Below, piece after piece: positions 5,138 through 48,726 of a DNA stretch of 64,000 bases. Below the pieces are notes generated by a model that saw only the letters and a list, made by a program, of their open reading frames with translations, was not told where the DNA came from and made no database searches. Position 1 is the stretch's first letter. Each line of letters starts with the position of its first letter. The DNA is from Hypanus sabinus (Eukaryota): the NCBI RefSeq assembly GCF_030144855.1, contig NC_082712.1:12152001-12216000 (forward strand), given 5' to 3'. The position numbers and the translations under genes were made by a program.

Positions 5138-6970
5138 TTAAAGGAACGCACGAGTACCCTTTAACAAGTCAATTTTAGTGATGTACCTCGCCTTCCCCAG
5201 TTTATCAATGCAATCATCCACCCAGGGGATAGGGTAAGCGTCTGTCTGGGTGACAGCTTTTACCTTTCGATAATCGGTACAGAATCTTATGGTACCGTCC
5301 GGATTTGGGACAACCACGCAAGGAGAAGGCCACGCAGAAGAGGATTCGCGGATTATCCCAGCAGCTAGCATATGTTCAATCTCCTTTCCTACTAGCTGGC
5401 TCTTTTCGGAATTCATCCGATAAGGGGCCTGTTTTATAGGCGGTGTCGAGGTAACTATCACATCATGTTTCGTCCCACTACACCTTCTTGGGACGTCTGG
5501 ACATAAGTCTTTATGCCGGTTAATGAGCTGTGTTACCTGCTCCCGCTGTTCAAGCTTTAAGTGGCTAACTTTATCCGCAAGGCTTTCTAATATAACCGAG
5601 TTCTCCAGTCTGGTGGGTACTATACGTATCTTTTCAAACCGCTCTGGTTCCTCCTTACCCCTCCCCTCTACCTCATCGGTTTTCATAACCGCACCGACCA
5701 CCGCGGGGGTGGTTTCATGGTACCCTTTCATCATGTTCACGTGAACTAACTGGGTCGGCTTTCGCCGATCGGGGGTATCAATCACGTAATTCAGCGAGTC
5801 TATTTTCTTATACACTGTATATGGTCCTTGAAACCTCGCCTGAAGGGGGTGGGTAACTACCGGAAATAGGACCAAAACCTTGTCGCCCACGTGAAACTCT
5901 TGCTCTCTCGTTCCTTGGTTATACCACTTTCTCATTTTTTTTTCCTGGGAGTCTTTAATGTTTTCTCTTGCTAAGGCGCATACTTTATGCAGCCTTTCCC
6001 GGAATTTCAGAACATAGTCGATCACACTGACTTGAACGGTCGGGCTGGACCACTTTTCTCTCAGGAGGGTTAGAGGGCCCCTGGGCCGGTGACCGAAAAC
6101 AAGCTCAAACGGACTGAACCCCAGAGAGCCCTGAACTGTATCCCTTACGGCAAATAACAGAAGGGGTAAAGCATCATCCCAGTCCCGAACGTTTTCCTGA
6201 CAATAAGTTTTAATCATGGTCTTTAGTGTAGCGTGGAATCTTTCCAACGCTCCTTGGGATTCCGGATGGTATGCAGAGGCTAAAATTTGTTTGACCCCCA
6301 GCTGGGTCATCATCTGCCGAAATGCTCTGGACGTGAATGTACTCCCCTGATCCGACTGTATCTCCTTAGGCAGCCCCACAGTGGTAAAGAATTTAATGAG
6401 AGCCTTCACCACCACGGAAGTCCTAATATTACCCAGAGGCACAGCCTCTGGAAATCGCGTAGCGGCACACATCAGGGTTATGATATACTGCCGCCCACTC
6501 GCAGTTTTAGGTAAAGGACCCACAAAATCCACAATGACTCGGGAGAAAGGCTCCTCACACGCGGGGATGGGTCGGAGGGGTGCCTTAGGGATAACTTGGT
6601 TCGGCTTACCCACCACCTGACATGTATGACACCTTTTACAATACTTAGTAATATATTTTCTCAGATTTGGCCAATAGAACTCTCTGATAACCCGATCCAC
6701 TGTCTTCGTTATTCCCAAAAGCCCACCCAAGGGTCCCTTATGAGCTAAGTTCAAAATTTCGTCCCGATACACTTTCGGGACTACTACCTGATGTACCACC
6801 GCCCAGTCCTCATCGACCGGCACCGCTGGGGGCCTCCATTTTCTCATCAACACACCCTCTTTCAGGTAGTAACCCTTGGGCTCTGTCTCAATCTCAGAAA
6901 GAACTGACTCTCTCAATGCTACCAGCTCCTCGTCACCTTCCTGTTCCCGTACAAACTCTCTTCTTGCCAA
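5138..6970 (-). CDS. Integrase (zinc-binding domain, DDE core, GPY/F module) followed by the RT N-terminus
   Basis: 610-aa ORF: RCHTCQ; RVIVDFVGP / IQSDQG / QGALERFH DDE triad; RFQGPYTV; then PPIKQAPYR..RFCTDYRKV..KIDLLKG. The second His of the HHCC motif reads Leu (GGLLG). Confidence 0.93.
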   Translation of the reverse strand: MARREFVREQEGDEELVALRESVLSEIETEPKGYYLKEGVLMRKWRPPAVPVDEDWAVVHQVVVPKVYRDEILNLAHKGPLGGLLGITKTVDRVIREFYWPNLRKYITKYCKRCHTCQVVGKPNQVIPKAPLRPIPACEEPFSRVIVDFVGPLPKTASGRQYIITLMCAATRFPEAVPLGNIRTSVVVKALIKFFTTVGLPKEIQSDQGSTFTSRAFRQMMTQLGVKQILASAYHPESQGALERFHATLKTMIKTYCQENVRDWDDALPLLLFAVRDTVQGSLGFSPFELVFGHRPRGPLTLLREKWSSPTVQVSVIDYVLKFRERLHKVCALARENIKDSQEKKMRKWYNQGTREQEFHVGDKVLVLFPVVTHPLQARFQGPYTVYKKIDSLNYVIDTPDRRKPTQLVHVNMMKGYHETTPAVVGAVMKTDEVEGRGKEEPERFEKIRIVPTRLENSVILESLADKVSHLKLEQREQVTQLINRHKDLCPDVPRRCSGTKHDVIVTSTPPIKQAPYRMNSEKSQLVGKEIEHMLAAGIIRESSSAWPSPCVVVPNPDGTIRFCTDYRKVKAVTQTDAYPIPWVDDCIDKLGKARYITKIDLLKGTRAFL

Positions 6971-6978
6971 GGGTAGGT

Positions 6979-7485
6979 CTACCTCCCCCCGTTTTTTCTC
7001 TCTCTTTCCTCCCTACTCTCCGGTTTGCCTTCCTCTGACCCTCGTTGGTACAGAGTCGGCAAAAACGTCTCGGCCAAATCGACACTGGCCGGACTTAAAC
7101 TGCTCTCTGTCTCGGCTGCCTTTTTCGCCATGCTGCGAGTGACCGCGCATGCGGGATAGATCTTGGAATCTGGGGGCGGGGCCTCAACCCTCACAGGCTT
7201 GTTTGTCAGCTTCAAGGCTGCACCCACCTTTCCACCCGCCAAGTCGTTACCAAGAAGGACGTCCACGCCTTCCCCCGGCAACTCCGGCAGTACCCCCAAT
7301 TCCACTGGCCCAGACACCAGCTCACAATTCAGAATGACCCTATGCAATGGCACCACGTCGCTCCATTTTCCTATGCCTCTCAGGGCTACCTCTCCCGCCT
7401 GAGGACCAAAATCTAGCACCTTACTGCTAATCAATGACAGCTCAGCCCCCGTGTCTCTCCAGATCCGTACTGGAACTGGGGTGCC
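6979..7485 (-). pseudogene. Aspartic protease region of the Gmr1-like element
   Basis: In frame with gag after a single TGA at 7486-7488; reads GTPVPVRIWRDTGAELSLISSKV (DTG active site) and later GVDVLLGNDL. Confidence 0.85.
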
Positions 7486-11268: not shown

Positions 11269-13289
11269 TGTGGTAAGCTATGTATACCTGTCTGGACACG
11301 CCCCTCTGCTGACTGCTCCTGTGGCTTCTCCCACAGACCCCTGTATAGAGGCGATTGGGGCACTGCTCCTTCCTCAGACTCCGAGATGTCGTGCTCCCTT
11401 TTACTGCTAATAAAAGCCTATCGTTCACTTCCAGTCTCCGAGAGTTATTGATGGTGCATCAATTTTATTAGCAGCAATTTTAAAACATGGAGAGCATTTT
11501 ATGACCAGACAGATTGGGATCTCGACCCTCATCCCAGGAAGGTGGCGACACTTTTGAACTCTGGCTATCAAGCTTCCAATCGTACCTGGAGGAGATTCAC
11601 GTGACCGATCCTGCCACGATGAGGGTCTACTCCATGATCAGAGACAAAACGGACTACCGGGGTGCGGTGGATGCCCTCAAAAGGCAATACCGGCAGCCGG
11701 TGAACACCGTCTATGCAAGACATTGCTCAGCGATGCGGCGGTAGCAGGCCCGTGAGTCGAGCGCTGAGTTTGTCCAGGCCCTACAGACACTCTTGCGGGC
11801 CTGCGACTGCAGGGGATTGATGGTGGAACAGCATGCGGAGCTGCTGGTAAGAGACGCCTTCGTTACAGGGATCAGGTCAGTGCACATGTGCCAGCGCGCA
11901 GCTCGACCGGCTATACGCCCTCCATGCAGATCTTTGCCACCCGAAGGTAACCCAACATTAGCATTTCGTGTAGTCCGGGAACCTCCCTTACTCCCTTGAG
12001 GAAATCAAGATGATGACCAGGGACGGCCAAGTCTGCGCTGAGTGCAAACCGCACTTCTACCATCCTGAAAAGGCACAATTTATCAAGGCCACCCGCCCCT
12101 TTGAGCGACTGAGTGTTGACTTTAAGGGCCCCCTTCCCTCCACCGACTGCAATGTCTACTTTCTTAATATTATCGACGAGTACTCGGGGTTCCCCTTTGC
12201 CATCCCCTGCCCTGATACCTCTGCCACGTCCGTCATAAAAGCCCTGCACCGGTTCTTCACTCTGTTCGGATATCCCTGTTATATCCACAGTGATAGAGGG
12301 TCCTCGTTTATAAGTGACGAGCTGCACCATTACCTGCTGGCTAGGGGTATTGCTACTGGTAGGACCACAAGCTATAATCCCCTGGGGAATGGACAGGTGG
12401 AGAGGGAAAATGCCACGGTGTGGAAGGCCACACTCTTAGCCCTTAGGTCAAAGGGATTGCCGGTCTCTCAATGGCAGGAGGTCCTCCCCGAGGCGCTCCA
12501 CTCCATCCGCTCCCTGTTATGCACGTCCACCAATGCCACCCCTCATGAGCGACTCTTTTCTTTTCCCAGGAAGTCTGCCACTGGGACCACCCTACCGGCT
12601 TGGCCGATGTCCCCAGGGCCAGTGCTGCTCTGGAAACATGTGAGGAGCAATAAGTACTCCCCGATGGTCGAGAGGGTTCACCTACTTCATGCGAACCCCC
12701 AGTATGCCTACATGGTCTTACCTGATGGGCGGGAGGACATGGTCTCTGTCCGCGACCTGGCGCCCACAGGAGCACCAGACCCCTACCCCGAACACTCCAC
12801 GGTGACTATGAACCCCGTACCCACGAGAGACCGTGCACCCCAAGCCCTACACAGACTCCTCACGACACTCCCATACCGGCTGCAACGCACACGCATGAGG
12901 GATTACTGATGCCTAACGGGCTGGCACCTCAAGTCAGGCCAGAGCCAGCAAAACCACCATCTCCGGTGCAATCACCACCGGTGCTCCGTAGATCGCAGCG
13001 ACAGACTCGACCGCCTGATAGACTTGACCTGTAAATATACTTGTAAGAAACTTCGCCCCGTGGGGACTCTCTTTTAAAACAAAGGTTGGGAGTGAATGTG
13101 ATAAACTATGCATACCTATCTGGACACGCCCCTCTGCTGACTGCTCCTGTGGCTCCTCCCACAGACCCCTGTATAAAGGCGATTGGGGCACTGCTCCTCC
13201 CTCAGTCTCCGAGATGTCGTGCTCCCTCTTGCTGCTAATAGAAGCCTATCGTTCACTTCCAGTCTCCGAGAGTTATTGATGGTGCATCA
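11269..13289 (+). mobile_element. Internally deleted Ty3/Gypsy element with 193-bp LTRs (gag remnant and integrase; PR/RT/RH lost)
   Basis: LTRs 11269-11461 and 13097-13289 (TG..CA); 5-bp TSD GGGTC at 11264-11268 and 13290-13294; purine-rich tract before the 3' LTR; degenerate gag at 11487-11900. Confidence 0.92.
12010..12909 (+). CDS. Retroviral-type integrase core (rve) of the short-LTR Gypsy element
   Basis: 299-aa ORF: RPFERLSVDFKGP, IIDEYSGFPFA, IHSDRGSSF, GNGQVEREN (DDE triad); CAEC at the N-terminus. Confidence 0.88.
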   Translation: MMTRDGQVCAECKPHFYHPEKAQFIKATRPFERLSVDFKGPLPSTDCNVYFLNIIDEYSGFPFAIPCPDTSATSVIKALHRFFTLFGYPCYIHSDRGSSFISDELHHYLLARGIATGRTTSYNPLGNGQVERENATVWKATLLALRSKGLPVSQWQEVLPEALHSIRSLLCTSTNATPHERLFSFPRKSATGTTLPAWPMSPGPVLLWKHVRSNKYSPMVERVHLLHANPQYAYMVLPDGREDMVSVRDLAPTGAPDPYPEHSTVTMNPVPTRDRAPQALHRLLTTLPYRLQRTRMRDY

Positions 13290-18560: not shown

Positions 18561-19017
18561 AAGCCCAATAGTGATTGCTGTCTGTGCAGCATTTACCACC
18601 GCCTTAATTCGGCCTCTATCTACGATCGTTCTCCGGTTCTACATATTTGGCATGTTCAGTCCAGAATTCTGAAACAGGTTGTAGAGTGAATCTAGGAAGA
18701 GGCCAATTAAAGACAAATAACATTTCTTCACGTGGAACATGGTGTTCTCGTTGGATCTCGTTGCGTCTGCACCTTGTGGTTGGAAAACCGGTCTTCTCAG
18801 TCTCCTGCGGTGGATCAGTCTCGTCGCTTTCTGTGGACAGAACGAAACGGTTAACACGAATCTAGATCATACAATGACACCACATCCAACTCCCTCCCCC
18901 AATTCACTTATAACCTTGGAAAGGATTTGGCTCGAGACGTGAATGGGTATTCTCACAGAATAAATTTTGTCGTCAGTATCAGTGTTTGATAACAAAACTG
19001 GAGATGAGCCCAAACAT

Positions 19018-20638: not shown

Positions 20639-20741
20639 CTGAGTTTGTCACAGTAGAGAACGGCACCCATCACTAAAAGGGCGAGAGTTTTCAGTCCGAG
20701 TGGGCTACACAACATCAGCACGGTTTCAGAAGCGCCTGTCC
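20639..20741 (-). CDS. Transmembrane exon with intramembrane Lys (DAP12-type activating receptor)
   Basis: Acceptor ctctctcactttctcttcag|, phase 1; (G)TGASETVLMLCSPLGLKTLALLVMGAVLYCDKL(R); donor AG|gtactg. LGLKTLALL resembles the Siglec-15 TM LGFKALLLL. Read-through gives RYCMY*. Confidence 0.8.
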
Positions 20742-24990: not shown

Positions 24991-25386
24991 CTGGGGTGAC
25001 CTGCAGCTGGATCTCACTCTGGATCACATGCATATATGGGGGTTTGACGCGGTCTCCGCGAGGCCAATGATAATAATCATGCTGGCTTTTCCTGAACTCA
25101 GCCAGACACAGGTAGCTGTGACTGTCCTCCACTCTCAGCTGCTTTATCCTGGTCGAGGCGTTTCCCAGCTCTGGGTCCCCGACGAGCTTGTACCGCGTCA
25201 CTCCGTTTTCCACTGCCCACGATCCGTTTTCATAATGCCTGAAGGTGACGATGTGTCGGTAGGGATCCTTCCTCATCCACGTCACCGTGTGTGCGGTGAG
25301 GTTCTGCGGGGGCCGTGTGAACACACAGGGTAACGTGGCCGAAGCTCCTTCAGTCCCGTTCAGCACTGGAACACTCTCGCCGGGAG
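24991..25386 (-). CDS. Ig V-set exon 2 (Siglec-15-related, lacks the essential Arg, extended FG loop)
   Basis: Acceptor tgtccttccctcag|, donor G|gtaaga; 396 nt, phase 1-1; ATLPCVFTRP, TVTWMR, RYKLVGDP, EDSHSYLCLAEF; no stop codons. Confidence 0.9.
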
Positions 25387-25674: not shown

Positions 25675-26505
25675 ATCACTAATCAGTGGAGTGTAACAAG
25701 ACCAATCAGTACAGTCTAACAACACCAATCAGTACAGTCTAACAACACCAATCAGTACAGTGAAACACTGGCCATTACAGTGAAACAGCACAGATCAATA
25801 CGCTGTAACAACACCAATCAGTACAGTGTAACAACACTGATCAGTACAGTATAACACCAATCAGTACAGTGTAACAACACTAGCCATTACAGTGTAACAC
25901 CACCAGTAGGTACAGTCACTGTACGACGTCACTTCAGTGTAACAACACTAATCAGTACAGTGTGATAACACTAATCAGTACAGTGTAACAACTCTAGTCA
26001 GTACAGTGCAACAATACTAATCACTATAGTGTGAATACACTAATCAGTGCAGTGTAACAACACTAGTCACTACTGTGCAATAATGCTAATGACTGAAGTA
26101 TAACAACATTAACCAGTACTGTGTAAGAACATCAGTCACTACATTGTAACAACACTAGTCACTGTAGTGTGACCACTCTATTCACTAAAGTGTAATAACA
26201 CTACTCACTGCAGAGTAACATCTCTAGTCACAACAGCATAACACTAGGCATAACAGTGTCATAGCACTAGTCACTACAGAATTATAACACTACTCAGTAC
26301 AGTGTAAAAACACTAGTCACTGCAGTATAACAACACTAATTAGTACAGTGTGACAACACAATCACCACAATGAAACAACACCAGTCAGTATTGTATAACA
26401 ACACTAGTCACTATACTGTTACAGCCTAATCAATACAGAGTAATAATACTGATCAATACAGTATAACAACACCAGTCAGTCCAGTGTAATGGCATTAGTC
26501 ATTAA
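25675..26505. repeat. Degenerate ~23-bp minisatellite (consensus about AATCAGTACAGTGTAACAACACT), about 35 copies
   Basis: Recurrent CAGTACAGTGTAACAACAC units, seen directly. Confidence 0.9.
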
Positions 26506-28061
26506 CTTATTAACTTAGCTGTGGGAATATTTTGCATTATGAGCTGTGTGTGATGTGATACCGTAGATGTTTTCTGGGTGCATTGTGCTCCAGAGGAACG
26601 CTGTTACATTTTGTTGTGGAGATGTACAGTCAGATGACAATGAACATGATCTTCATCTGTACTTGAATCTCTTCTACACTGAATCCACTCCAGTGTGATA
26701 CTTACCTTACTGAAAGTGTTCAACAACCTGAGCTGGTGTGTTTGACAGAGAATTCTACAGTGAATCCTCTCCAGTGTAATACTTAATGTACTGAAAATGT
26801 TCAACTTTCTTATGTTTTGTGAGTGCACCTTGATCCGGAAGAAGGTGGTTTCACTAGAACACTAGAATACTACAACACAGTACAGGCCCTTCAGCCCTGG
26901 ATGTTGTGCCGACCCATATATTCCTTTAAAAAAGTACTAAACCCACACTACCCCGTAACCTTCTATTTTTCTTTTATCAATGTGCATGTCCAAGAGGCTC
27001 TTAAATACCCCAAATGTTTTAGCCTCCTCCACCATCCCTGGCAAGTCATTCCAGGCACCCACTACCCTCTAATAAAAAAAAACTTACCCCAATGTCTCCC
27101 CTAAACTTCCCTCCATTAACTTTGTACATATGCCCTCTGGTGTTTGCTATTGGTGCCCTGGGAAACAGGTACTGACTATCCACTCTATCTATGCCTCTCA
27201 TGATCTTTAGACCTCTATCAAGTCCCCTCTCATCCTTCTAAGCTCCAAAGAGAAAAGTCCCAGCTCTGCTAACATTGCCTCATAAGACTTGTGTTCCAAT
27301 CCAGGCAACATCCTGGTAAATCTCCTCTGCACCCTCTCCATAGCTTCCACATCCTTCCTATAATGAGGTAACCAGAACTGAACACAATACTCTAAGTGTG
27401 GTCTCACCAGAGATTTGTAGAGTTGCAACATGACCTCTCTACTCTTGAACTCAGTCCTCCTATTAATGAAGCCTAGCATCCCATAGGCCTTCTTAACTAC
27501 CCTATCAACCTGCGCAGCGACCTTGAGGGATGTATGGATTTGAACCCCAAGGTCCCTTTGTTCATCCGCATTCTTAATTAACTGACCATTAATCCTGTAC
27601 TCAGTCTTCTGGTTTGTCCTTCCAAAATGCATCAACTCACACTTATCCGGATCGAACTCTATCACCGACCTCCAGGCAGAATACTTTCCTTCCACTACTA
27701 CCCTCTGCTTTCTTCTTGTAAGCCAATTTTTTATCCAAACAGCCAAGGTTCCACTGATCCCATGCCTCATGACTTTCTTGATGAGTCTCTCATGGGGGAC
27801 CTTGTCAAATGCCTTGTTAAAATCCATGTAGACCACATCTACTGCCCTACCCTGATCAATTCCTTTTGTTACCTCTTCAAAAAACTCAATCAGGCTTGTG
27901 AGGCACAACCTTCCCTTCACAAAGCCATGTTCACTATCCTTGAGTAGACTGTACTTCTCCAAATACTCGTAGATCCTATCCTTAAGAATCCTTTCCAATA
28001 GTTTTCAGACCACTGACATAAGACTCACCAGTCTATAGTTCCCAGGATTCTCCCTATTACC

Positions 28062-31970: not shown

Positions 31971-34961
31971 TCAATACCCAGTCCCTGCCTTGTCCCCATA
32001 TCCCTTGATTCCCCTATCCATCAGATATCTATCTAGCTCCTTCTTGAAAGCATCCAGAGAATTGGCCTCCACCGTCTTCCGAGGCAGTGCATTCCACACC
32101 TCCACAACTCTCTGGGAGAAGAAGCTCTTCCTCAACTCTGTTTTAAATAACTGACCTCTTATTCTCAATCCATGCCCTCTGGTACTGGTCTCTCCCAACA
32201 TCTGGAACATATTTCCTGCCTCAATCCTATCAAATCCTTTAATTATCTTAAACGTTTCAATCCGATCCCCTCTCAATCTCCTCAATTCCAGCGTGTACAA
32301 GCCCAATCTCTCCAATCTTTCTGCGTAAGACAGCCCTGCCATCCCAGGAATCAACCTAGTGAATCTACGCTGCACTTCCTCAACTGCCAGAATGTCCTTC
32401 CTTAAACCTGGAGACCAAAACTGTACACAATATTCCAGGTGTGGTCTCACCAGGGCCCTGTACAAATGCAAAAGGACATCCTTGCTCTTGTATTCAATTC
32501 CCCTTGTAACAAAGGCCAACATTCCATTTGCCCTCTTCACTGCCTGTTGCACTTGCTCATTCACCTTCATTGACTGGTGAACTAAGACTCCTAGGTCTCT
32601 TTGCATTTCTCCCTTACCTAACTCTACACCGTTCAGACAATACTCTGCCCTCTTGTTCCTGATTCCAAAGTGGATAACTTCACATTTATTCACATTGAAT
32701 GACATCTGCCAAGTATCTGCCCACTCACCCAGCCTATCCAAGTCTCCCTGTATTCTCCTAACGTCCTCTTCGCATGTCACACTGCCACCCAGTTTAGTAT
32801 CGTCAGCAAACTTGCTGATATAGTTTTCAATGCCCTCATCTAAATCATTGACATAAATCGTAAAGAGCTGTGGTCCCAATACAGAGCCCTGTGGTACCCC
32901 ACTAGTCACCTCCAGTCAGTCCGAGAAACACCCATTCACTGATACCCTTTGCTTTCTATCTGCCAACCAGTTTTCTATCCATGTTGAAACCCTGCCCCCA
33001 ATGCCATGAGCTCTGATTTTACTCACCAATCTCCTATGTGGCACCTTATCGAATGCCTTCTGAAATCTAGGTATACAACATCCACTGGCTTACCCTCATC
33101 TAACATCCTTGTTACAACCTCAAAAAACTCCAACAGATTAGTCAAGCATGATTTGCCCTTGGTAAATCCATGCTGGCTCAGCCTAATCCTATTTCTGCCA
33201 TCTAGATGTGCCACTGTTTCGTCCTTAATAATGGACTCAAGCATCTTCCCCATGACTGACGTTATGCTAACAGGGCGATAGATCTCCATTTTCTCCTTCC
33301 CTCCCTTCTTGAAAAGTGGGATAACACTAGCCACTCTCCAACCTTCAGGAACTGATCCTGAATCTAAGGAACATTGGAAAATGATTACCAATGCATCCGC
33401 AATTTCCTGAGCCACCTCTTTTAGAACCCTTGGATGCAGACCAAACGGACCCGGGGATTTATTAGCCTTCATTCCTACCAGTCTACTCATCACAGATTCT
33501 TTCCGAATGTCAATCTGTCTCAATTCCTCTGATATCTTATGACCCTGGCCCATCCATACATCTGGGAGATTGCTTGTGTCCTCCCTGGTGAAGACAGATC
33601 TAAAGTACGCATTAAATTCTGTTGCCATTTCCCTGTTTCCCATAACAATTTCTCCCAATTCATTCTTCAAGGAGCCAACATTGTTCTTAACTATCTTCTT
33701 TCTCTTCACATAGCTAAAAAAAGCTTTTGCTATCCCCTTTTATATTCCTGGCTAGACTGAGCTCATACCTGATTTTTTCTCTCTGTATTGCTTTTTTAGT
33801 TAAGATCTGCTGTTCCTTAAAACTTTCCCAATCATCTGTATTCCCACTCATCTTAGCCCTGTCATACTTCTTTTTCTTTAATGCAATACAATCTCTGACT
33901 TCCTTTGTCAACCACTGTGGCCCCTTCCCCCTCTTTGAATCCTTCCTTCTCATTGGAATGAACTGCTTTTGCATCTTTTGTATTATGCCCAAGAATATCT
34001 GCCACTGCTGATCCACTGTCTTTCCTGCCAGGGCATCCGCCCATTTAACTTTGGCCAGCTCTTCCCTCATGGCTCCGTAGTCTCCTTTATTTAATTGCAA
34101 CACTGACACCTCTGATCTGCCCTTATCCCTCTCAAATTGTAGATGAAAACTTATCATGTTATGATCACTACATCCTAATGGCTCCTTTACTTCAAGATCA
34201 CTTATCAATTCCTGTTCATTACACATCACCAAGTCCAAAATAGCCTCGTTCCTGGTTGGCTCAAGCACAAGCTGTTCCAAAAATACATCCCTTAGACACT
34301 CCACAAACTCCCTATCCTGGGGTCCAGCACCTACCTGATTCTCCCAGTTCACCTGCATGTTGAAATCTCCCATAACGACTGCATTACCTTTAGCACATGC
34401 CAATGTTAACTCCCTAATCAACTTGTACCCAATATCCATGCTACTGTTTGGGGGCCTGTACACAACACCCATTAGGGTCTTTTTACCCTTACTGTTCCTC
34501 AGCTCAATCCACACAGACTCTACTTCCCCTGTTCCCAAGTCACCTCTTGCTAAGGATTGAATCTCATTCCTCACCAACAGGGCCACCCCACCCTCTCTTC
34601 CCATATTTCTGTTTCTACGTTAGCACGTATACCCTGGTACACTCAATTCCCAGGCCTGATCCCCTTGCAGCCATGTCTCCGTTATCCCAACAATATCGTA
34701 GTTCCCCATTTTCATCCGAGCTTCAAGCTCATCTGTCTTATTTCTGACACTACGCGCATTCAAGTATAGAATTCTTAGCCCATTCCTCCTCTCTTTGTTT
34801 AAAACACTGTCTACTGTACCTAACCCAGCTCCTTGAACTTCCATCGGGCTAATTGCACCCTGAATTTTGATGACCTTCTCAAGATCACCCAAACCTTCTA
34901 CACATTTAACCCCATGCTCCTTCTGACCAACCCTCTTGATCTGGATCCCTGCCCCCTGCAC
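31971..34961 (-). pseudogene. CR1 ORF2 (APE endonuclease and RT) with a few stops/frameshifts
   Basis: [54 protein letters not shown]. Confidence 0.93.
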
Positions 34962-38727: not shown

Positions 38728-39111
38728 CTCCCACAGACAGATTTGTTAGAAGCACCGTTCGAAACTTGCCAACATTGAGCTCCACCCGGCACCAATACCG
38801 ACCACCGTCACTCCGGTTCAGTCGCTCCACCATTATCGAGGCATCTCTCCGACTGAGGTTCCCCACGAATCCGAACCGCCCTCCTCCAGCCTCCTGTGTC
38901 GTTGTATCGCACCAGGAGCGGCCAGAACCGGGATATGTGCAGTTAAACACCAGTTTTTTAGCACCTGGTTCCCCTCTGTACCAGATCACGGAGCCGTTCA
39001 GTGCGACACCAGGAGGTGGGTGGGTGAAAGTACACGGTAACACAGCGGGAGCCCCTTCCTCCGCAGAGACCACATCAGCGCCGGACATTGACCAACCATA
39101 TATCGAATCGT
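38728..39111 (-). CDS. SIGLEC15-like: Ig V-set exon 1, Siglec-15-like, sialic-acid-binding Arg retained
   Basis: Acceptor tctctgcag|, donor G|gtgagg; 384 nt, phase 1-1; WSM..VSAEEGAPAVLPCTFTHP..WYRGEP..VFNC..WC..GRFGFVGN..VERL..YWCRVE matches human Siglec-15 as recalled from memory (WSM..VSAEAGDAAVLPCTFTHP..WRAGEP..VFRC..LC..GRFRLLGN..VERL..YFCRVE), including the extra Cys pair. Confidence 0.93.
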
Positions 39112-39115
39112 CTGC

Positions 39116-39330
39116 AGAGAGAGAGATAGTGAGAGTGTATGTGAGTGAGTGAGTGAGTGAGTGAGTGAGTGAATGAGAGAGAGAGAGAGAGTGTGTGTGA
39201 GAGAGAGAGGGAGTAATTGAGAGACAGTGGATGAGAGAGAGAGGGAGTAATTGAGAGACAGTGGATGAAAGAGAGAGGGAGTGAGTGAGAGAGGGAGAGA
39301 GAGTGTGTGCATGTAAGTGAGGGAGATAGA
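39116..39330. repeat. Compound (GA)n/(GAGT)n microsatellite forming the pyrimidine tract upstream of the V1 acceptor
   Basis: Seen directly. Confidence 0.9.
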
Positions 39331-48240: not shown

Positions 48241-48665
48241 ATTCTGAAGGCCGTCGAACAGCCAATGTGCAAAGGGGAAAGATCGTGAAAACAATAAAAA
48301 TAAGCAAATAGCATTGAGAACTGAAGAACGTACAGACAGCGGCGAGAATTGAACCTGGGTCACAGGGAATGTAAAGCATCACGCTAACCACCACACTACA
48401 GCTTCGCTCCAAATTCATCACCACCCAGGCTTGGAATTGTGCCCGGCCTTTAACTGGGATCAAACTTGGACGTCTCTTCCCAATAGTACTGGGGTTCATC
48501 GTCACCAGAAGGCAGTCCAGCCTAGCACTCAGGGAAGGACAGGGTCCGAACGCCAACCCTCCACGGGCAGAACCAACGTCCAAATAGATCGCGCTGCGCC
48601 ACAAAGTAAAACGAGCCTTTAGGAGAGAGACAACGGGGAGACAGGGGACAATGGAAAACACCTAC

Positions 48666-48726
48666 TGTATCCCCGGACTGAGACGGACAACAGGACGGTG
48701 CAGAGACAAACCCGGAGAGAGAGCAT
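48666..48726 (-). CDS. Signal-peptide (leader) exon of the Siglec-15-like gene
   Basis: ATG at 48726: MLSLRVCLCTVLLSVSVRGY plus 1 nt, donor A|gtaggt (phase 1); basic residue, hydrophobic core, then V-R-G cleavage-like end; lies in unique, non-repeat sequence. Confidence 0.8.

What the first reader, a model, noticed from the sequence alone, without database searches (positions are those of the whole stretch)
24991..25386. Second V domain lacks the sialic-acid Arg and has a germline-encoded long, aromatic/His-rich FG (CDR3-like) loop
Seen: the F-strand reads YLCLAEF, against YWCRVEL in V1, so the essential Arg is Leu. The extra Cys pair of V1 is absent. From the F-strand Cys to the exon end is 39 residues (RKSQHDYYHWPRGDRVKPPYMHVIQ..) against 21 in V1. 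The exon is intact with strong splice sites. Known: that Arg is required for sialic-acid binding in Siglecs, and long CDR3 loops are a binding strategy of shark VNAR. Inference: V2 may bind a protein or pathogen ligand through a protruding loop, giving a two-specificity receptor.
Basis: partly seen in the sequence, partly recalled or inferred. Interest (0 to 1): 0.75.

Follow-up and report, generated by a model that had tools for sequence, protein, structure and literature searches.

The report
Stingray Siglec-15-like receptor, long-looped V2
This exon encodes the second, non-sugar-binding antibody-like domain of a stingray immune receptor descended from Siglec-15. Its unusually long surface loop is real, specific to rays and skates, and the fastest-changing part of the domain, which hints at a second binding site without proving one.

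Summary
Window 24991-25386 (minus strand) is an intact phase 1-1 V-set exon. Its F strand reads YLCLAEF, with Leu where Siglec-15 has the essential Arg. It has no extra Cys pair, and 19 residues lie between the F and G strands.

It is exon 3 of a five-exon gene: signal peptide, V1, V2, a transmembrane segment with Lys, and a short tail. The spliced 319-aa product is identical to Hypanus sabinus RefSeq XP_059829792/XP_059829795.

V1 (E 2e-19) and V2 (E 7e-11) both match human Siglec-15 best among solved structures. The gene belongs to a multigene family found across sharks and rays. Members have a V1-V2 ectodomain and either a Lys-bearing transmembrane segment (activating type) or a tail with an ITIM-like motif (inhibitory type).

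V2 never carries the Arg. The long loop is a ray and skate trait (median 17 residues against 5 in sharks). Among close relatives it differs at 51% of positions, against 8-21% elsewhere in the domain. AlphaFold2 models it as a flexible, low-confidence hairpin.

A second, non-sialic recognition surface is plausible but unproven. I could not compute dN/dS and saw no expression or binding data. I rate it a new variant of a known kind, of moderate interest.

The parts
48666..48726 (-). Exon 1, coding part: ATG and signal peptide (MLSLRVCLCTVLLSVSVRGY), donor ACA|gtaggt, ends in phase 1
   Evidence: tblastn of homologues, 86% identity to P0007 residues 1-21; sequence read; spliced product identical to P0233
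48334..48418 (-). Alternative first coding exon used by RefSeq isoform X1 (MNLERSC...)
   Evidence: Exact match of the isoform X1 N-terminus (P0171/P0232) to the window
38728..39111 (-). Exon 2: V1, a Siglec-15-like V-set domain with F-strand Arg (CGG 38786-38788), A-strand Trp and the extra Cys pair
   Evidence: Pfam V-set E 1e-11; PDB 7zoz Siglec-15 E 2e-19
24991..25386 (-). Exon 3: V2, the reported V-set domain. Leu replaces the Arg, there is no extra Cys pair, and it has four N-glycosylation sequons
25037..25093 (-). FG loop of V2, 19 residues (RKSQHDYYHWPRGDRVKPP), between F strand ...CLAEF and G strand YMHVIQSEIQLQVT
   Evidence: Translation; AF2 secondary structure and pLDDT; family alignment
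20639..20741 (-). Exon 4: transmembrane segment with Lys (AAA 20689-20691; ...PLGLKTLALLVMG...) and start of the short tail
   Evidence: tblastn; sequence. A similar Lys-bearing transmembrane motif occurs in bird Siglec-15 P0088
18815..18830 (-). Exon 5, coding part: KRRD and stop codon
   Evidence: Pattern search with acceptor; completes identity to P0233

Best explanation
Shown: the exon encodes domain 2 (V2) of a 319-aa type I membrane receptor of the Atlantic stingray, RefSeq LOC132396283 or LOC132396285. The protein runs signal peptide, V1, V2, transmembrane helix with a Lys, then a short tail. V1 keeps the Siglec-15 lectin hallmarks: the F-strand Arg, the A-strand Trp and the extra disulfide pair. 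V2 is a diverged copy of the same kind of V domain that has lost all three. The gene belongs to an elasmobranch-wide multigene family descended from a Siglec-15-like ancestor, with activating-type and inhibitory-type members that share near-identical ectodomains. The 19-residue FG loop is a ray and skate elongation of a turn that is about 5 residues in sharks. It is the most variable part of V2, and AF2 models it as a flexible hairpin with tip HWPRGD.

Inferred: V2 cannot bind sialic acid in the canonical way. The Lys-bearing transmembrane segment probably couples to a DAP12-type adaptor, as in Siglec-15. The loop most likely forms or tunes a second, non-sialic contact surface at the V1-V2 elbow, possibly together with the neighbouring BC loop. 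On this reading, paralogues differ in ligand specificity mainly through this loop.
For: Gene model and identity. The spliced product is identical to XP_059829792/795.

Siglec-15 kinship: V1 E 2e-19 and V2 E 7e-11 to PDB 7zoz, each the best hit. The V2 family profile gives Siglec-15 as the best hit whose score rests on one matched domain. V1 and V2 are 32% identical, E 6e-13. The transmembrane motif PLGLK resembles bird Siglec-15 PLGIK.

Family: 90 homologues in 16 genera of sharks, skates and rays. The activating P0220 and inhibitory P0186 of the same species are 88% identical up to the V2 exon boundary and unrelated after it.

Arg status: V2 has Leu in 48 and Gln in 6 of 54 sequences, never Arg. 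V1 has Arg in 36 of 54.

Loop length: batoid median 17 (n=52) against shark median 5 (n=28), Mann-Whitney p 4e-13.

Loop variability: among 28 myliobatiform V2 domains, p-distance is 0.51 in the loop against 0.08-0.21 in the other six segments. Comparing the window with its eight closest homologues, loop differences exceed the rest at Fisher p below 0.05 in five of eight.

Loop type is kept across genera and signalling types: HWPRGD in the window, HWPKGD in the inhibitory-type H. akajei P0169, and HLPNGD in P0219.

V2 outside the loop is more conserved than V1 (p-distance 0.377 against 0.454), so V2 is under constraint and not decaying.

AF2: pLDDT 87 overall. F strand is 89-98, G strand 118-130, with a mini-hairpin between them (Y104-Y105 paired with R112-V113) at pLDDT 57-69.
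Against: - I have no binding, expression or selection data.
- dN/dS could not be computed because paralogue DNA was not retrievable.
- FG loops are often the most variable part of a V domain under relaxed constraint alone.
- The Tyr runs (YY, YYY, YYYYY) lie on TAT repeats in the window, which suggests replication slippage, a neutral source of length change.
- Low pLDDT means the protruding hairpin is not established.
- By Ig topology the loop lies next to V1, so it could be an interdomain strut.
- The three near-identical loci (LOC132396281/283/285) have identical V2 loops.
- The shark-versus-batoid test treats related sequences as independent.
- RefSeq models are predictions, and a paralogue has a predicted isoform that skips V2 (P0222).
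Confidence: 0.5

Rival explanations
1. Neutral spacer. V2 replaces the C2-set domain of Siglec-15 as a stalk that holds V1 away from the membrane. The long loop is a tolerated, slippage-prone insertion that drifts freely and contacts no ligand.
For: Low pLDDT in the loop. Tyr-run length variants sit on TAT repeats. Loop lengths range from 2 to 23 within batoids, so short loops are tolerated. Shark homologues manage with 5 residues. V2 is membrane-proximal.
Against: Length stays near 17 across Myliobatiformes. The loop flanks (RK.xH and V[KT]PP[YF]IH) and subtype motifs such as [HY][WL]P.[GR]D are conserved between genera and between activating and inhibitory forms. This is not expected of free drift. 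The rest of V2 is more conserved than V1.
Confidence: 0.3
2. Architectural or cis role. The highly conserved C-C' face of V2 mediates receptor dimerisation or association in cis. The FG loop flanks that interface or buttresses V1, and so sets the presentation of the V1 sialic-acid site rather than binding a ligand itself.
For: The C-C' segment TVTWMRKDPYRHIVTF is the most conserved part of V2 (p-distance 0.083). The closest folds are nectin-1, PVR, CAR, CRIg and JAML; the first three of these are known to pair through the GFCC' sheet (my own knowledge). The two-domain model has pTM 0.84, and the sequence shows only about six residues between the last strand of V1 and the first strand of V2. 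Both suggest a fixed interdomain arrangement.
Against: A structural interface would be expected to conserve the loop, yet it is the most variable segment. The PVR-family signature motifs are absent from the sequence (read directly). No multimer model was run, and I could not inspect coordinates.
Confidence: 0.15
3. V2 still binds sialic acid, or another acidic sugar, in a non-canonical way that uses the basic residues and Tyr/His of the loop.
For: V2 keeps the equivalents of Siglec-15 Y87 (DPY) and of the HDRY segment (HDYY) that contacts sialic acid in the human protein. The loop has five basic residues.
Against: The Arg is absent in every V2 examined and the A-strand Trp is missing. The HDY motif is confined to Myliobatiformes; it is absent from skates, electric ray, sawfish and sharks. 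It is therefore probably not an inherited lectin feature. R143A abolishes binding in Siglec-15 (PMC10264397).
Confidence: 0.04

Closest known systems
Siglec-15 (human PDB 7zoz; bird orthologue P0088)
   Same: It is the best solved-structure match for both V1 and V2. V1 shares the F-strand Arg, the A-strand Trp, the canonical B-F disulfide plus an extra Cys pair, and a Lys in a similar transmembrane motif with a short tail.
   Different: Siglec-15 is V-set plus C2-set. Here domain 2 is a second V-set domain without the Arg. V1 has a shorter F-G region that lacks the HDRY segment. The gene is one of many paralogues that include ITIM-type inhibitory forms, whereas Siglec-15 is a single conserved gene in tetrapods (the last point is my own knowledge).
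CD33-related Siglec paired receptors such as Siglec-5/14, and Arg-mutated Siglecs such as Siglec-12 (my own knowledge)
   Same: A rapidly evolving multigene family, with activating and inhibitory pairs that have near-identical ectodomains and recurrent loss of the essential Arg (18 of 54 V1 domains).
   Different: Those Siglecs have V-set plus C2-set domains and the unusual Siglec disulfide pattern. By sequence, CD33 matches V1 only weakly (E 2.5e-9).
Lungfish Siglec-15 isoform X2 (P0029) and skate V2-type plus C2 proteins (P0051, P0015)
   Same: They show that the Siglec-15 V exon has been duplicated in tandem in other lineages. They also show that Arg-less V2-type domains occur beside a Siglec-15-like C2 domain in skates.
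   Different: In lungfish both V domains keep the Arg and a C2 domain follows. In the skate proteins the V2-type loops are short (about 7 residues).
JAML (V-V ectodomain, PDB 3mj6/3mj9)
   Same: It is the best Foldseek match to the two-domain model. It is one of the few receptors with two tandem V-set domains.
   Different: TM-score is only 0.41-0.46 at rmsd 11 A with 15% identity. This is a resemblance in architecture only.
KIR, Fc receptors and cytokine receptors that bind at the interdomain elbow (my own knowledge)
   Same: In these two-domain receptors, ligand contacts come from the BC and FG loops at the top of domain 2. In the wider family alignment the BC and FG loops of V2 have the highest column entropy.
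   Different: Those domains are C2, I or FnIII type, there is no sequence relationship, and no elbow contact has been shown here.
Shark VNAR long CDR3
   Same: A long, Tyr-containing loop in the CDR3 position of a V-type domain in a cartilaginous fish.
   Different: The loop here is germline-encoded in one exon, with no V(D)J joining, no J-like FGxG motif and no loop Cys. The domain is membrane-proximal in an innate-type receptor.

Membership tests
Siglec lectin V-set domain (applied to V2) | Conserved Arg on the F strand that forms a salt bridge with the sialic-acid carboxylate | tested here: not met
   Leu aligns with the Arg of CRVEF (R143) of 7zoz. It is never Arg in 54 family members.
Siglec lectin V-set domain (applied to V2) | N-terminal position in the ectodomain, with an A-strand aromatic residue (W44 in Siglec-15) | tested here: not met
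   V2 is domain 2. Its A strand, PGESVPVLNG, has no Trp.
Siglec lectin V-set domain (applied to V2) | V-set fold homologous to Siglec V domains | tested here: met
   Pfam V-set E 3e-13. Siglec-15 is the best PDB sequence hit, E 7e-11. The AF2 model is a V-set sandwich.
Siglec-15 orthologue (applied to the whole gene) | V1 with Arg, the extra C'-C'' disulfide pair and the A-strand Trp | tested here: met
   Alignment to 7zoz, E 2e-19. Features as listed in PMC10264397.
Siglec-15 orthologue (applied to the whole gene) | Second domain of C2-set type | tested here: not met
   Domain 2 is V-set. I found no C2-like exon between V2 and the transmembrane exon.
Siglec-15 orthologue (applied to the whole gene) | Lys in the transmembrane helix and a short tail (adaptor coupling) | tested here: met
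   Lys codon at 20689-20691, tail DKLRKRRD. Adaptor binding itself cannot be tested here.
Siglec-15 orthologue (applied to the whole gene) | Single-copy, one-to-one orthology (synteny) | not testable with these tools
   Only this 64-kb window is available, and chromosome DNA was not retrievable. Many paralogues per species argue against simple orthology.
Paired activating/inhibitory Ig-superfamily receptors | Activating form with a basic transmembrane residue, and an inhibitory counterpart with an ITIM and a near-identical ectodomain | tested here: met
   The window gene is the activating type. P0220 and P0186 are 88% identical up to the V2 boundary. The P0186 tail has VIYAAV. Signalling was not tested.
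Rearranging antigen-receptor V domains (VNAR, Ig, TCR) | CDR3 made by V(D)J joining, with a J-encoded FGxG motif in the G strand | tested here: not met
   Loop and G strand are contiguous in one germline exon. The G strand YMHVIQSEIQLQVT has no FGxG.
Sialic-acid binding activity of V1 | Demonstrated binding to sialosides | not testable with these tools
   This requires recombinant protein.

The most novel reading that the evidence does not exclude
Rays and skates may have turned domain 2 of a Siglec-15-derived receptor into a germline-encoded repertoire of CDR3-like loops. Dozens of paralogues per genome would each carry a different long FG hairpin that recognises a protein (pathogen or host) ligand. 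In the same chain, V1 would read sialic acid as a self signal. The result would be an innate detector that reads self and non-self together, in matched activating and inhibitory versions. In the window's subtype the hairpin tip reads RGD (KGD or NGD in the sister genus), so an integrin-type ligand is one concrete possibility.
Probability: 0.12. Interest if true: 0.85.

Novelty: new variant of a known kind. Interest (0 to 1): 0.55.

Why it matters
Siglec-15 is regarded as the ancient, conserved, single-copy Siglec. This locus shows that in cartilaginous fishes its V domain and its Lys-bearing transmembrane module seeded a large paired-receptor family with a V-V ectodomain.

In that family the second V domain gave up sugar binding. 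In rays and skates it acquired a long, rapidly diversifying loop in the CDR3 position. If the loop binds ligands, this would be a germline route to variable protein recognition built on a lectin scaffold. It would sit in the lineage where rearranging antigen receptors are oldest.

It also gives a defined set of natural loop variants for testing how paired receptors diverge. In my searches of the held paper library I found no paper describing this family. In databases the proteins carry only automatic names.

Tried and rejected
(1) dN/dS in the loop. The look-up of encoding contigs returned no DNA for the chromosome-scale assembly and all close paralogues sit on similar records, so I made only protein-level comparisons.

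(2) Earlier scan notes. Look-ups by place and by words returned nothing.

(3) Literature on elasmobranch Siglecs or skate MDIR receptors. I found nothing relevant in the held library. MDIRs (my own knowledge) are CD300/TREM/pIgR-like. Here the best match whose score rests on a single domain is Siglec-15 rather than pIgR, so I did not file the gene there.

(4) A C2-set exon downstream of V2. None was found between 16000 and 24990.

(5) Reading HDYY as the inherited HDRY sialic-contact segment of Siglec-15. I rejected this as the likelier reading because sharks, skates, electric ray and sawfish lack the motif. The short turn seems ancestral and the long loop derived.

(6) Two separate tandem genes rather than one V1-V2 gene. 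I rejected this. Homologues place V2 at residues of about 150-280 after V1, and the spliced model equals a RefSeq protein.

(7) Fold searches for a specific structural relative of V2. They gave only generic V-set neighbours.

(8) Geometry of the loop relative to V1. I could not inspect model coordinates or PAE.

(9) RGD as an integrin motif. It is not conserved: NGD, KGD, NRD and TRD occur in the closest relatives. It stays as a note only.

Full report
WHAT IS AT THE COORDINATES

On the minus strand, window 24991-25386 is a 396-nt open exon. A pyrimidine tract and AG precede it, and CAG|gtaaga follows it. It is in phase 1 at both ends, the usual arrangement for Ig-domain exons.

The translation is a V-set domain (Pfam PF07686, E 3e-13). 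It has a B-strand Cys, a C-strand Trp and the F-strand motif YLCLAEF. After the F-strand Cys come 38 residues plus a split codon.

A second V-set exon lies upstream at 38728-39111, also phase 1-1. It reads YWCRVEL, has two extra Cys, and has 20 residues plus a split codon after the F-strand Cys.

GENE MODEL AND IDENTITY

tblastn with homologues found by a full HMMER scan, together with direct reading of splice sites, gives five coding exons on the minus strand:
- signal peptide, 48666-48726
- V1, 38728-39111
- V2, 24991-25386
- a transmembrane exon with a Lys, 20639-20741
- a four-codon last exon, 18815-18830

All junctions are canonical. The introns are 9.6, 13.3, 4.2 and 1.8 kb. The two longest contain LINE reverse-transcriptase and endonuclease fragments.

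The spliced 319-aa product is identical, residue for residue, to XP_059829792.1/XP_059829795.1 of Hypanus sabinus (LOC132396283 and LOC132396285). It differs at one residue from the LOC132396281 product. [quoted passage not shown]

V1 and V2 are therefore two domains of one predicted mRNA, not two genes. The gene exists in three near-identical copies. Both RefSeq isoforms keep exon 3. I saw no primary expression data.

HOMOLOGY

Among all PDB chains, human Siglec-15 (7zoz) is the best match for V1 (E 2e-19) and for V2 (E 7e-11). A profile of 83 V2 domains ranks pIgR and CD276 above Siglec-15, but their scores are sums over several weakly matching domains. Siglec-15 is the best match that rests on a single domain. 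V1 and V2 are 32% identical.

The Siglec-15 structure paper (PMC10264397) lists these features: R143 on strand F, the C64-C142 and C95-C104 disulfides, and sialic-acid contacts from W44, Y87, V150, R153, Y154 and E155.
- V1 keeps the Arg, the Trp and the extra Cys pair.
- V2 has Leu at the Arg position and lacks both the Trp and the extra pair.
- V2 does keep the DPY and HDYY segments that align with Y87 and with HDRY.

The transmembrane motif PLGLKTLALLV resembles PLGIKVLILLV of bird Siglec-15 (P0088).

THE FAMILY

A search with a complete homologue returned 90 proteins from 16 genera of sharks, skates, electric rays, sawfish, stingrays and mantas. Most have V1 at about residues 25-150 and V2 at about 150-280.

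Two C-terminal types occur. One has a Lys-bearing transmembrane segment and a short tail. The other has a neutral transmembrane segment and a long Tyr-rich tail ending in an ITIM-like VIYA[AE]V.

In H. sabinus, P0220 (activating type) and P0186 (inhibitory type) are 88% identical up to the end of the V2 exon and unrelated after it. This is the signature of paired receptors.

In a 54-sequence ectodomain alignment, V2 has Leu (48) or Gln (6) at the Arg position, never Arg. V1 has Arg in 36 and another residue in 18. Loss of the lectin Arg in V2 is therefore ancient and fixed. A third of the family has also lost it in V1.

Related architectures exist elsewhere. Lungfish Siglec-15 has V-V-C2. Skates have proteins that combine V2-type domains with a Siglec-15-like C2 domain.

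THE LOOP

I defined the loop as the residues between the conserved CL[AV]E[FY] and the conserved [YF][IM]H[VL].Q.E motif. It is 19 residues in the window.

Length:
- Across 83 V2 domains, sharks have 4-9 residues (median 5, n=28).
- Batoids have 2-23 residues (median 17, n=52).
- Mann-Whitney p is 4e-13, with the caveat that related sequences are not independent.

Because shark V2 loops (4-9 residues) and the skate V2-plus-C2 proteins (about 7 residues) are all short, the long loop looks like a derived batoid feature.

Variability:
- Among 28 closely related myliobatiform V2 domains, mean p-distance is 0.51 in the loop.
- The other six segments score 0.08-0.21. The C-C' segment is the most conserved at 0.083.
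- Between the window and its eight closest homologues, the loop carries 5-8 differences in 14-19 sites against 10-22 in 112. The excess is significant at p below 0.05 in five of the eight comparisons.
- In the wider family the BC loop is the second most variable segment.

Constraint:
- The loop flanks are conserved.
- Loop subtypes are kept across genera and across signalling types: HWPRGD in the window, HWPKGD in the inhibitory-type H. akajei P0169 (85% identical ectodomain), and HLPNGD in P0219.
- V2 outside the loop is more conserved than V1 (0.377 against 0.454).

Composition: His is enriched about twofold in batoid loops. Aromatic residues are only slightly enriched.

STRUCTURE PREDICTION

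AF2 with family alignments gave confident models:
- V1-V2: pLDDT 86.7, pTM 0.84.
- V2 alone: pLDDT 87.1.

In both models the F strand ends at R98 or K99 and a long continuous G strand begins at Y117 or M118. Residues 99-117 form a low-confidence excursion (pLDDT 57-69). It contains a two-residue ladder, Y104-Y105 against R112-V113, and the tip HWPRGD.

Fold searches returned only generic V-set neighbours: nectin-1, PVR, CRIg, CAR and JAML. I could not inspect coordinates, so the position of the hairpin relative to V1 is unknown.

HOW IT MOST LIKELY WORKS

Shown:
- the domain identity and the loss of the lectin residues;
- the receptor architecture and the paired family;
- the lineage-specific elongation and hypervariability of the loop.

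Inferred:
- V2 does not bind sialic acid canonically.
- The Lys-bearing transmembrane segment recruits a DAP12-type adaptor, as in Siglec-15.
- The loop, which by Ig topology lies at the V1-proximal end of V2 next to the BC loop, forms or tunes a non-sialic contact surface at the interdomain elbow. KIR, Fc receptors and cytokine receptors use the same loops of their second domains (my own knowledge).

I give this about even odds. The main rival, at 0.3, is a tolerated, slippage-prone spacer loop with no ligand role. A structural or cis-association role gets 0.15. Non-canonical sugar binding is unlikely.

COMPARISON, NOVELTY AND LIMITS

The gene works like, and descends from, Siglec-15. It fails the defining V-plus-C2 architecture and is one of many paralogues, so I do not file it as the Siglec-15 orthologue.

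In evolutionary style it resembles the CD33-related Siglec pairs. The VNAR comparison is an analogy only.

The proteins are in RefSeq under automatic names, and I found no description of the family in the held literature. I rate it a new variant of a known kind, interest 0.55.

Missing evidence: codon-level selection tests (DNA not retrievable), transcripts, binding data, and the geometry of the loop.

Noticed in passing
window 18815-48726 (whole gene): RefSeq lists three loci (LOC132396281, LOC132396283, LOC132396285) whose products are identical or differ by one transmembrane residue (Val or Met). The window matches the 283/285 sequence. These are either very recent segmental duplicates of a roughly 30-kb gene or an assembly duplication.
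   Followed up: partly
window 25052-25060 (minus strand, V2 residues 109-111): The predicted hairpin tip reads RGD, the classic integrin-binding tripeptide, within HWPRGD. The closest relatives have KGD, NGD, NRD or TRD, so RGD itself is not conserved and may be chance.
   Followed up: partly
window 25067-25081 (minus strand): The HDYYH codons read CAT GAT TAT TAT CAT. Paralogues have YYY or YYYYY at this spot, which suggests triplet slippage as one source of loop length change.
   Followed up: no
window 25677-26489: A tandem array of about 36 copies of a 23-bp unit (CACCAATCAGTACAGTGTAACAA) lies in intron 2, about 290 bp upstream of the V2 exon.
   Followed up: no
window 39116-39303: A (GA)n/(GAGT)n-type microsatellite runs up to the acceptor of the V1 exon.
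   Followed up: no
window 48334-48418: An alternative first coding exon is used by RefSeq isoform X1 (MNLERSC...). It does not look like a classical signal peptide, so isoform X1 may be a prediction artefact or a non-secreted form.
   Followed up: no
P0222 (H. sabinus LOC132396566 isoform X2): This predicted isoform of an inhibitory paralogue joins V1 directly to the transmembrane exon and skips V2. The V2 exon is phase 1-1, so skipping keeps the reading frame. V2 inclusion may be regulated.
   Followed up: no
P0177, P0001, P0187 (Hemitrygon akajei) and P0215 (Mobula hypostoma): These gene models carry two V2-type domains in tandem, each with a different FG loop. They are either real V2 exon duplications or merged neighbouring genes.
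   Followed up: no
window 27210-28004, 31974-32915, 33717-34619 (minus strand); 5141-7012 (minus); 11974-12906 (plus): The gene's introns contain LINE reverse-transcriptase and endonuclease ORF fragments. The region downstream of the gene contains retroelement integrase ORFs (Pfam RVT_1, Exo_endo_phos_2, rve).
   Followed up: partly
A1 alignment, V1 position after the F-strand Cys: 18 of 54 family members have lost the essential Arg in V1 as well (His, Asn, Gly, Gln, Tyr, Lys or Ser). A third of this Siglec-15-derived family is therefore probably not a sialic-acid lectin at all.
   Followed up: partly
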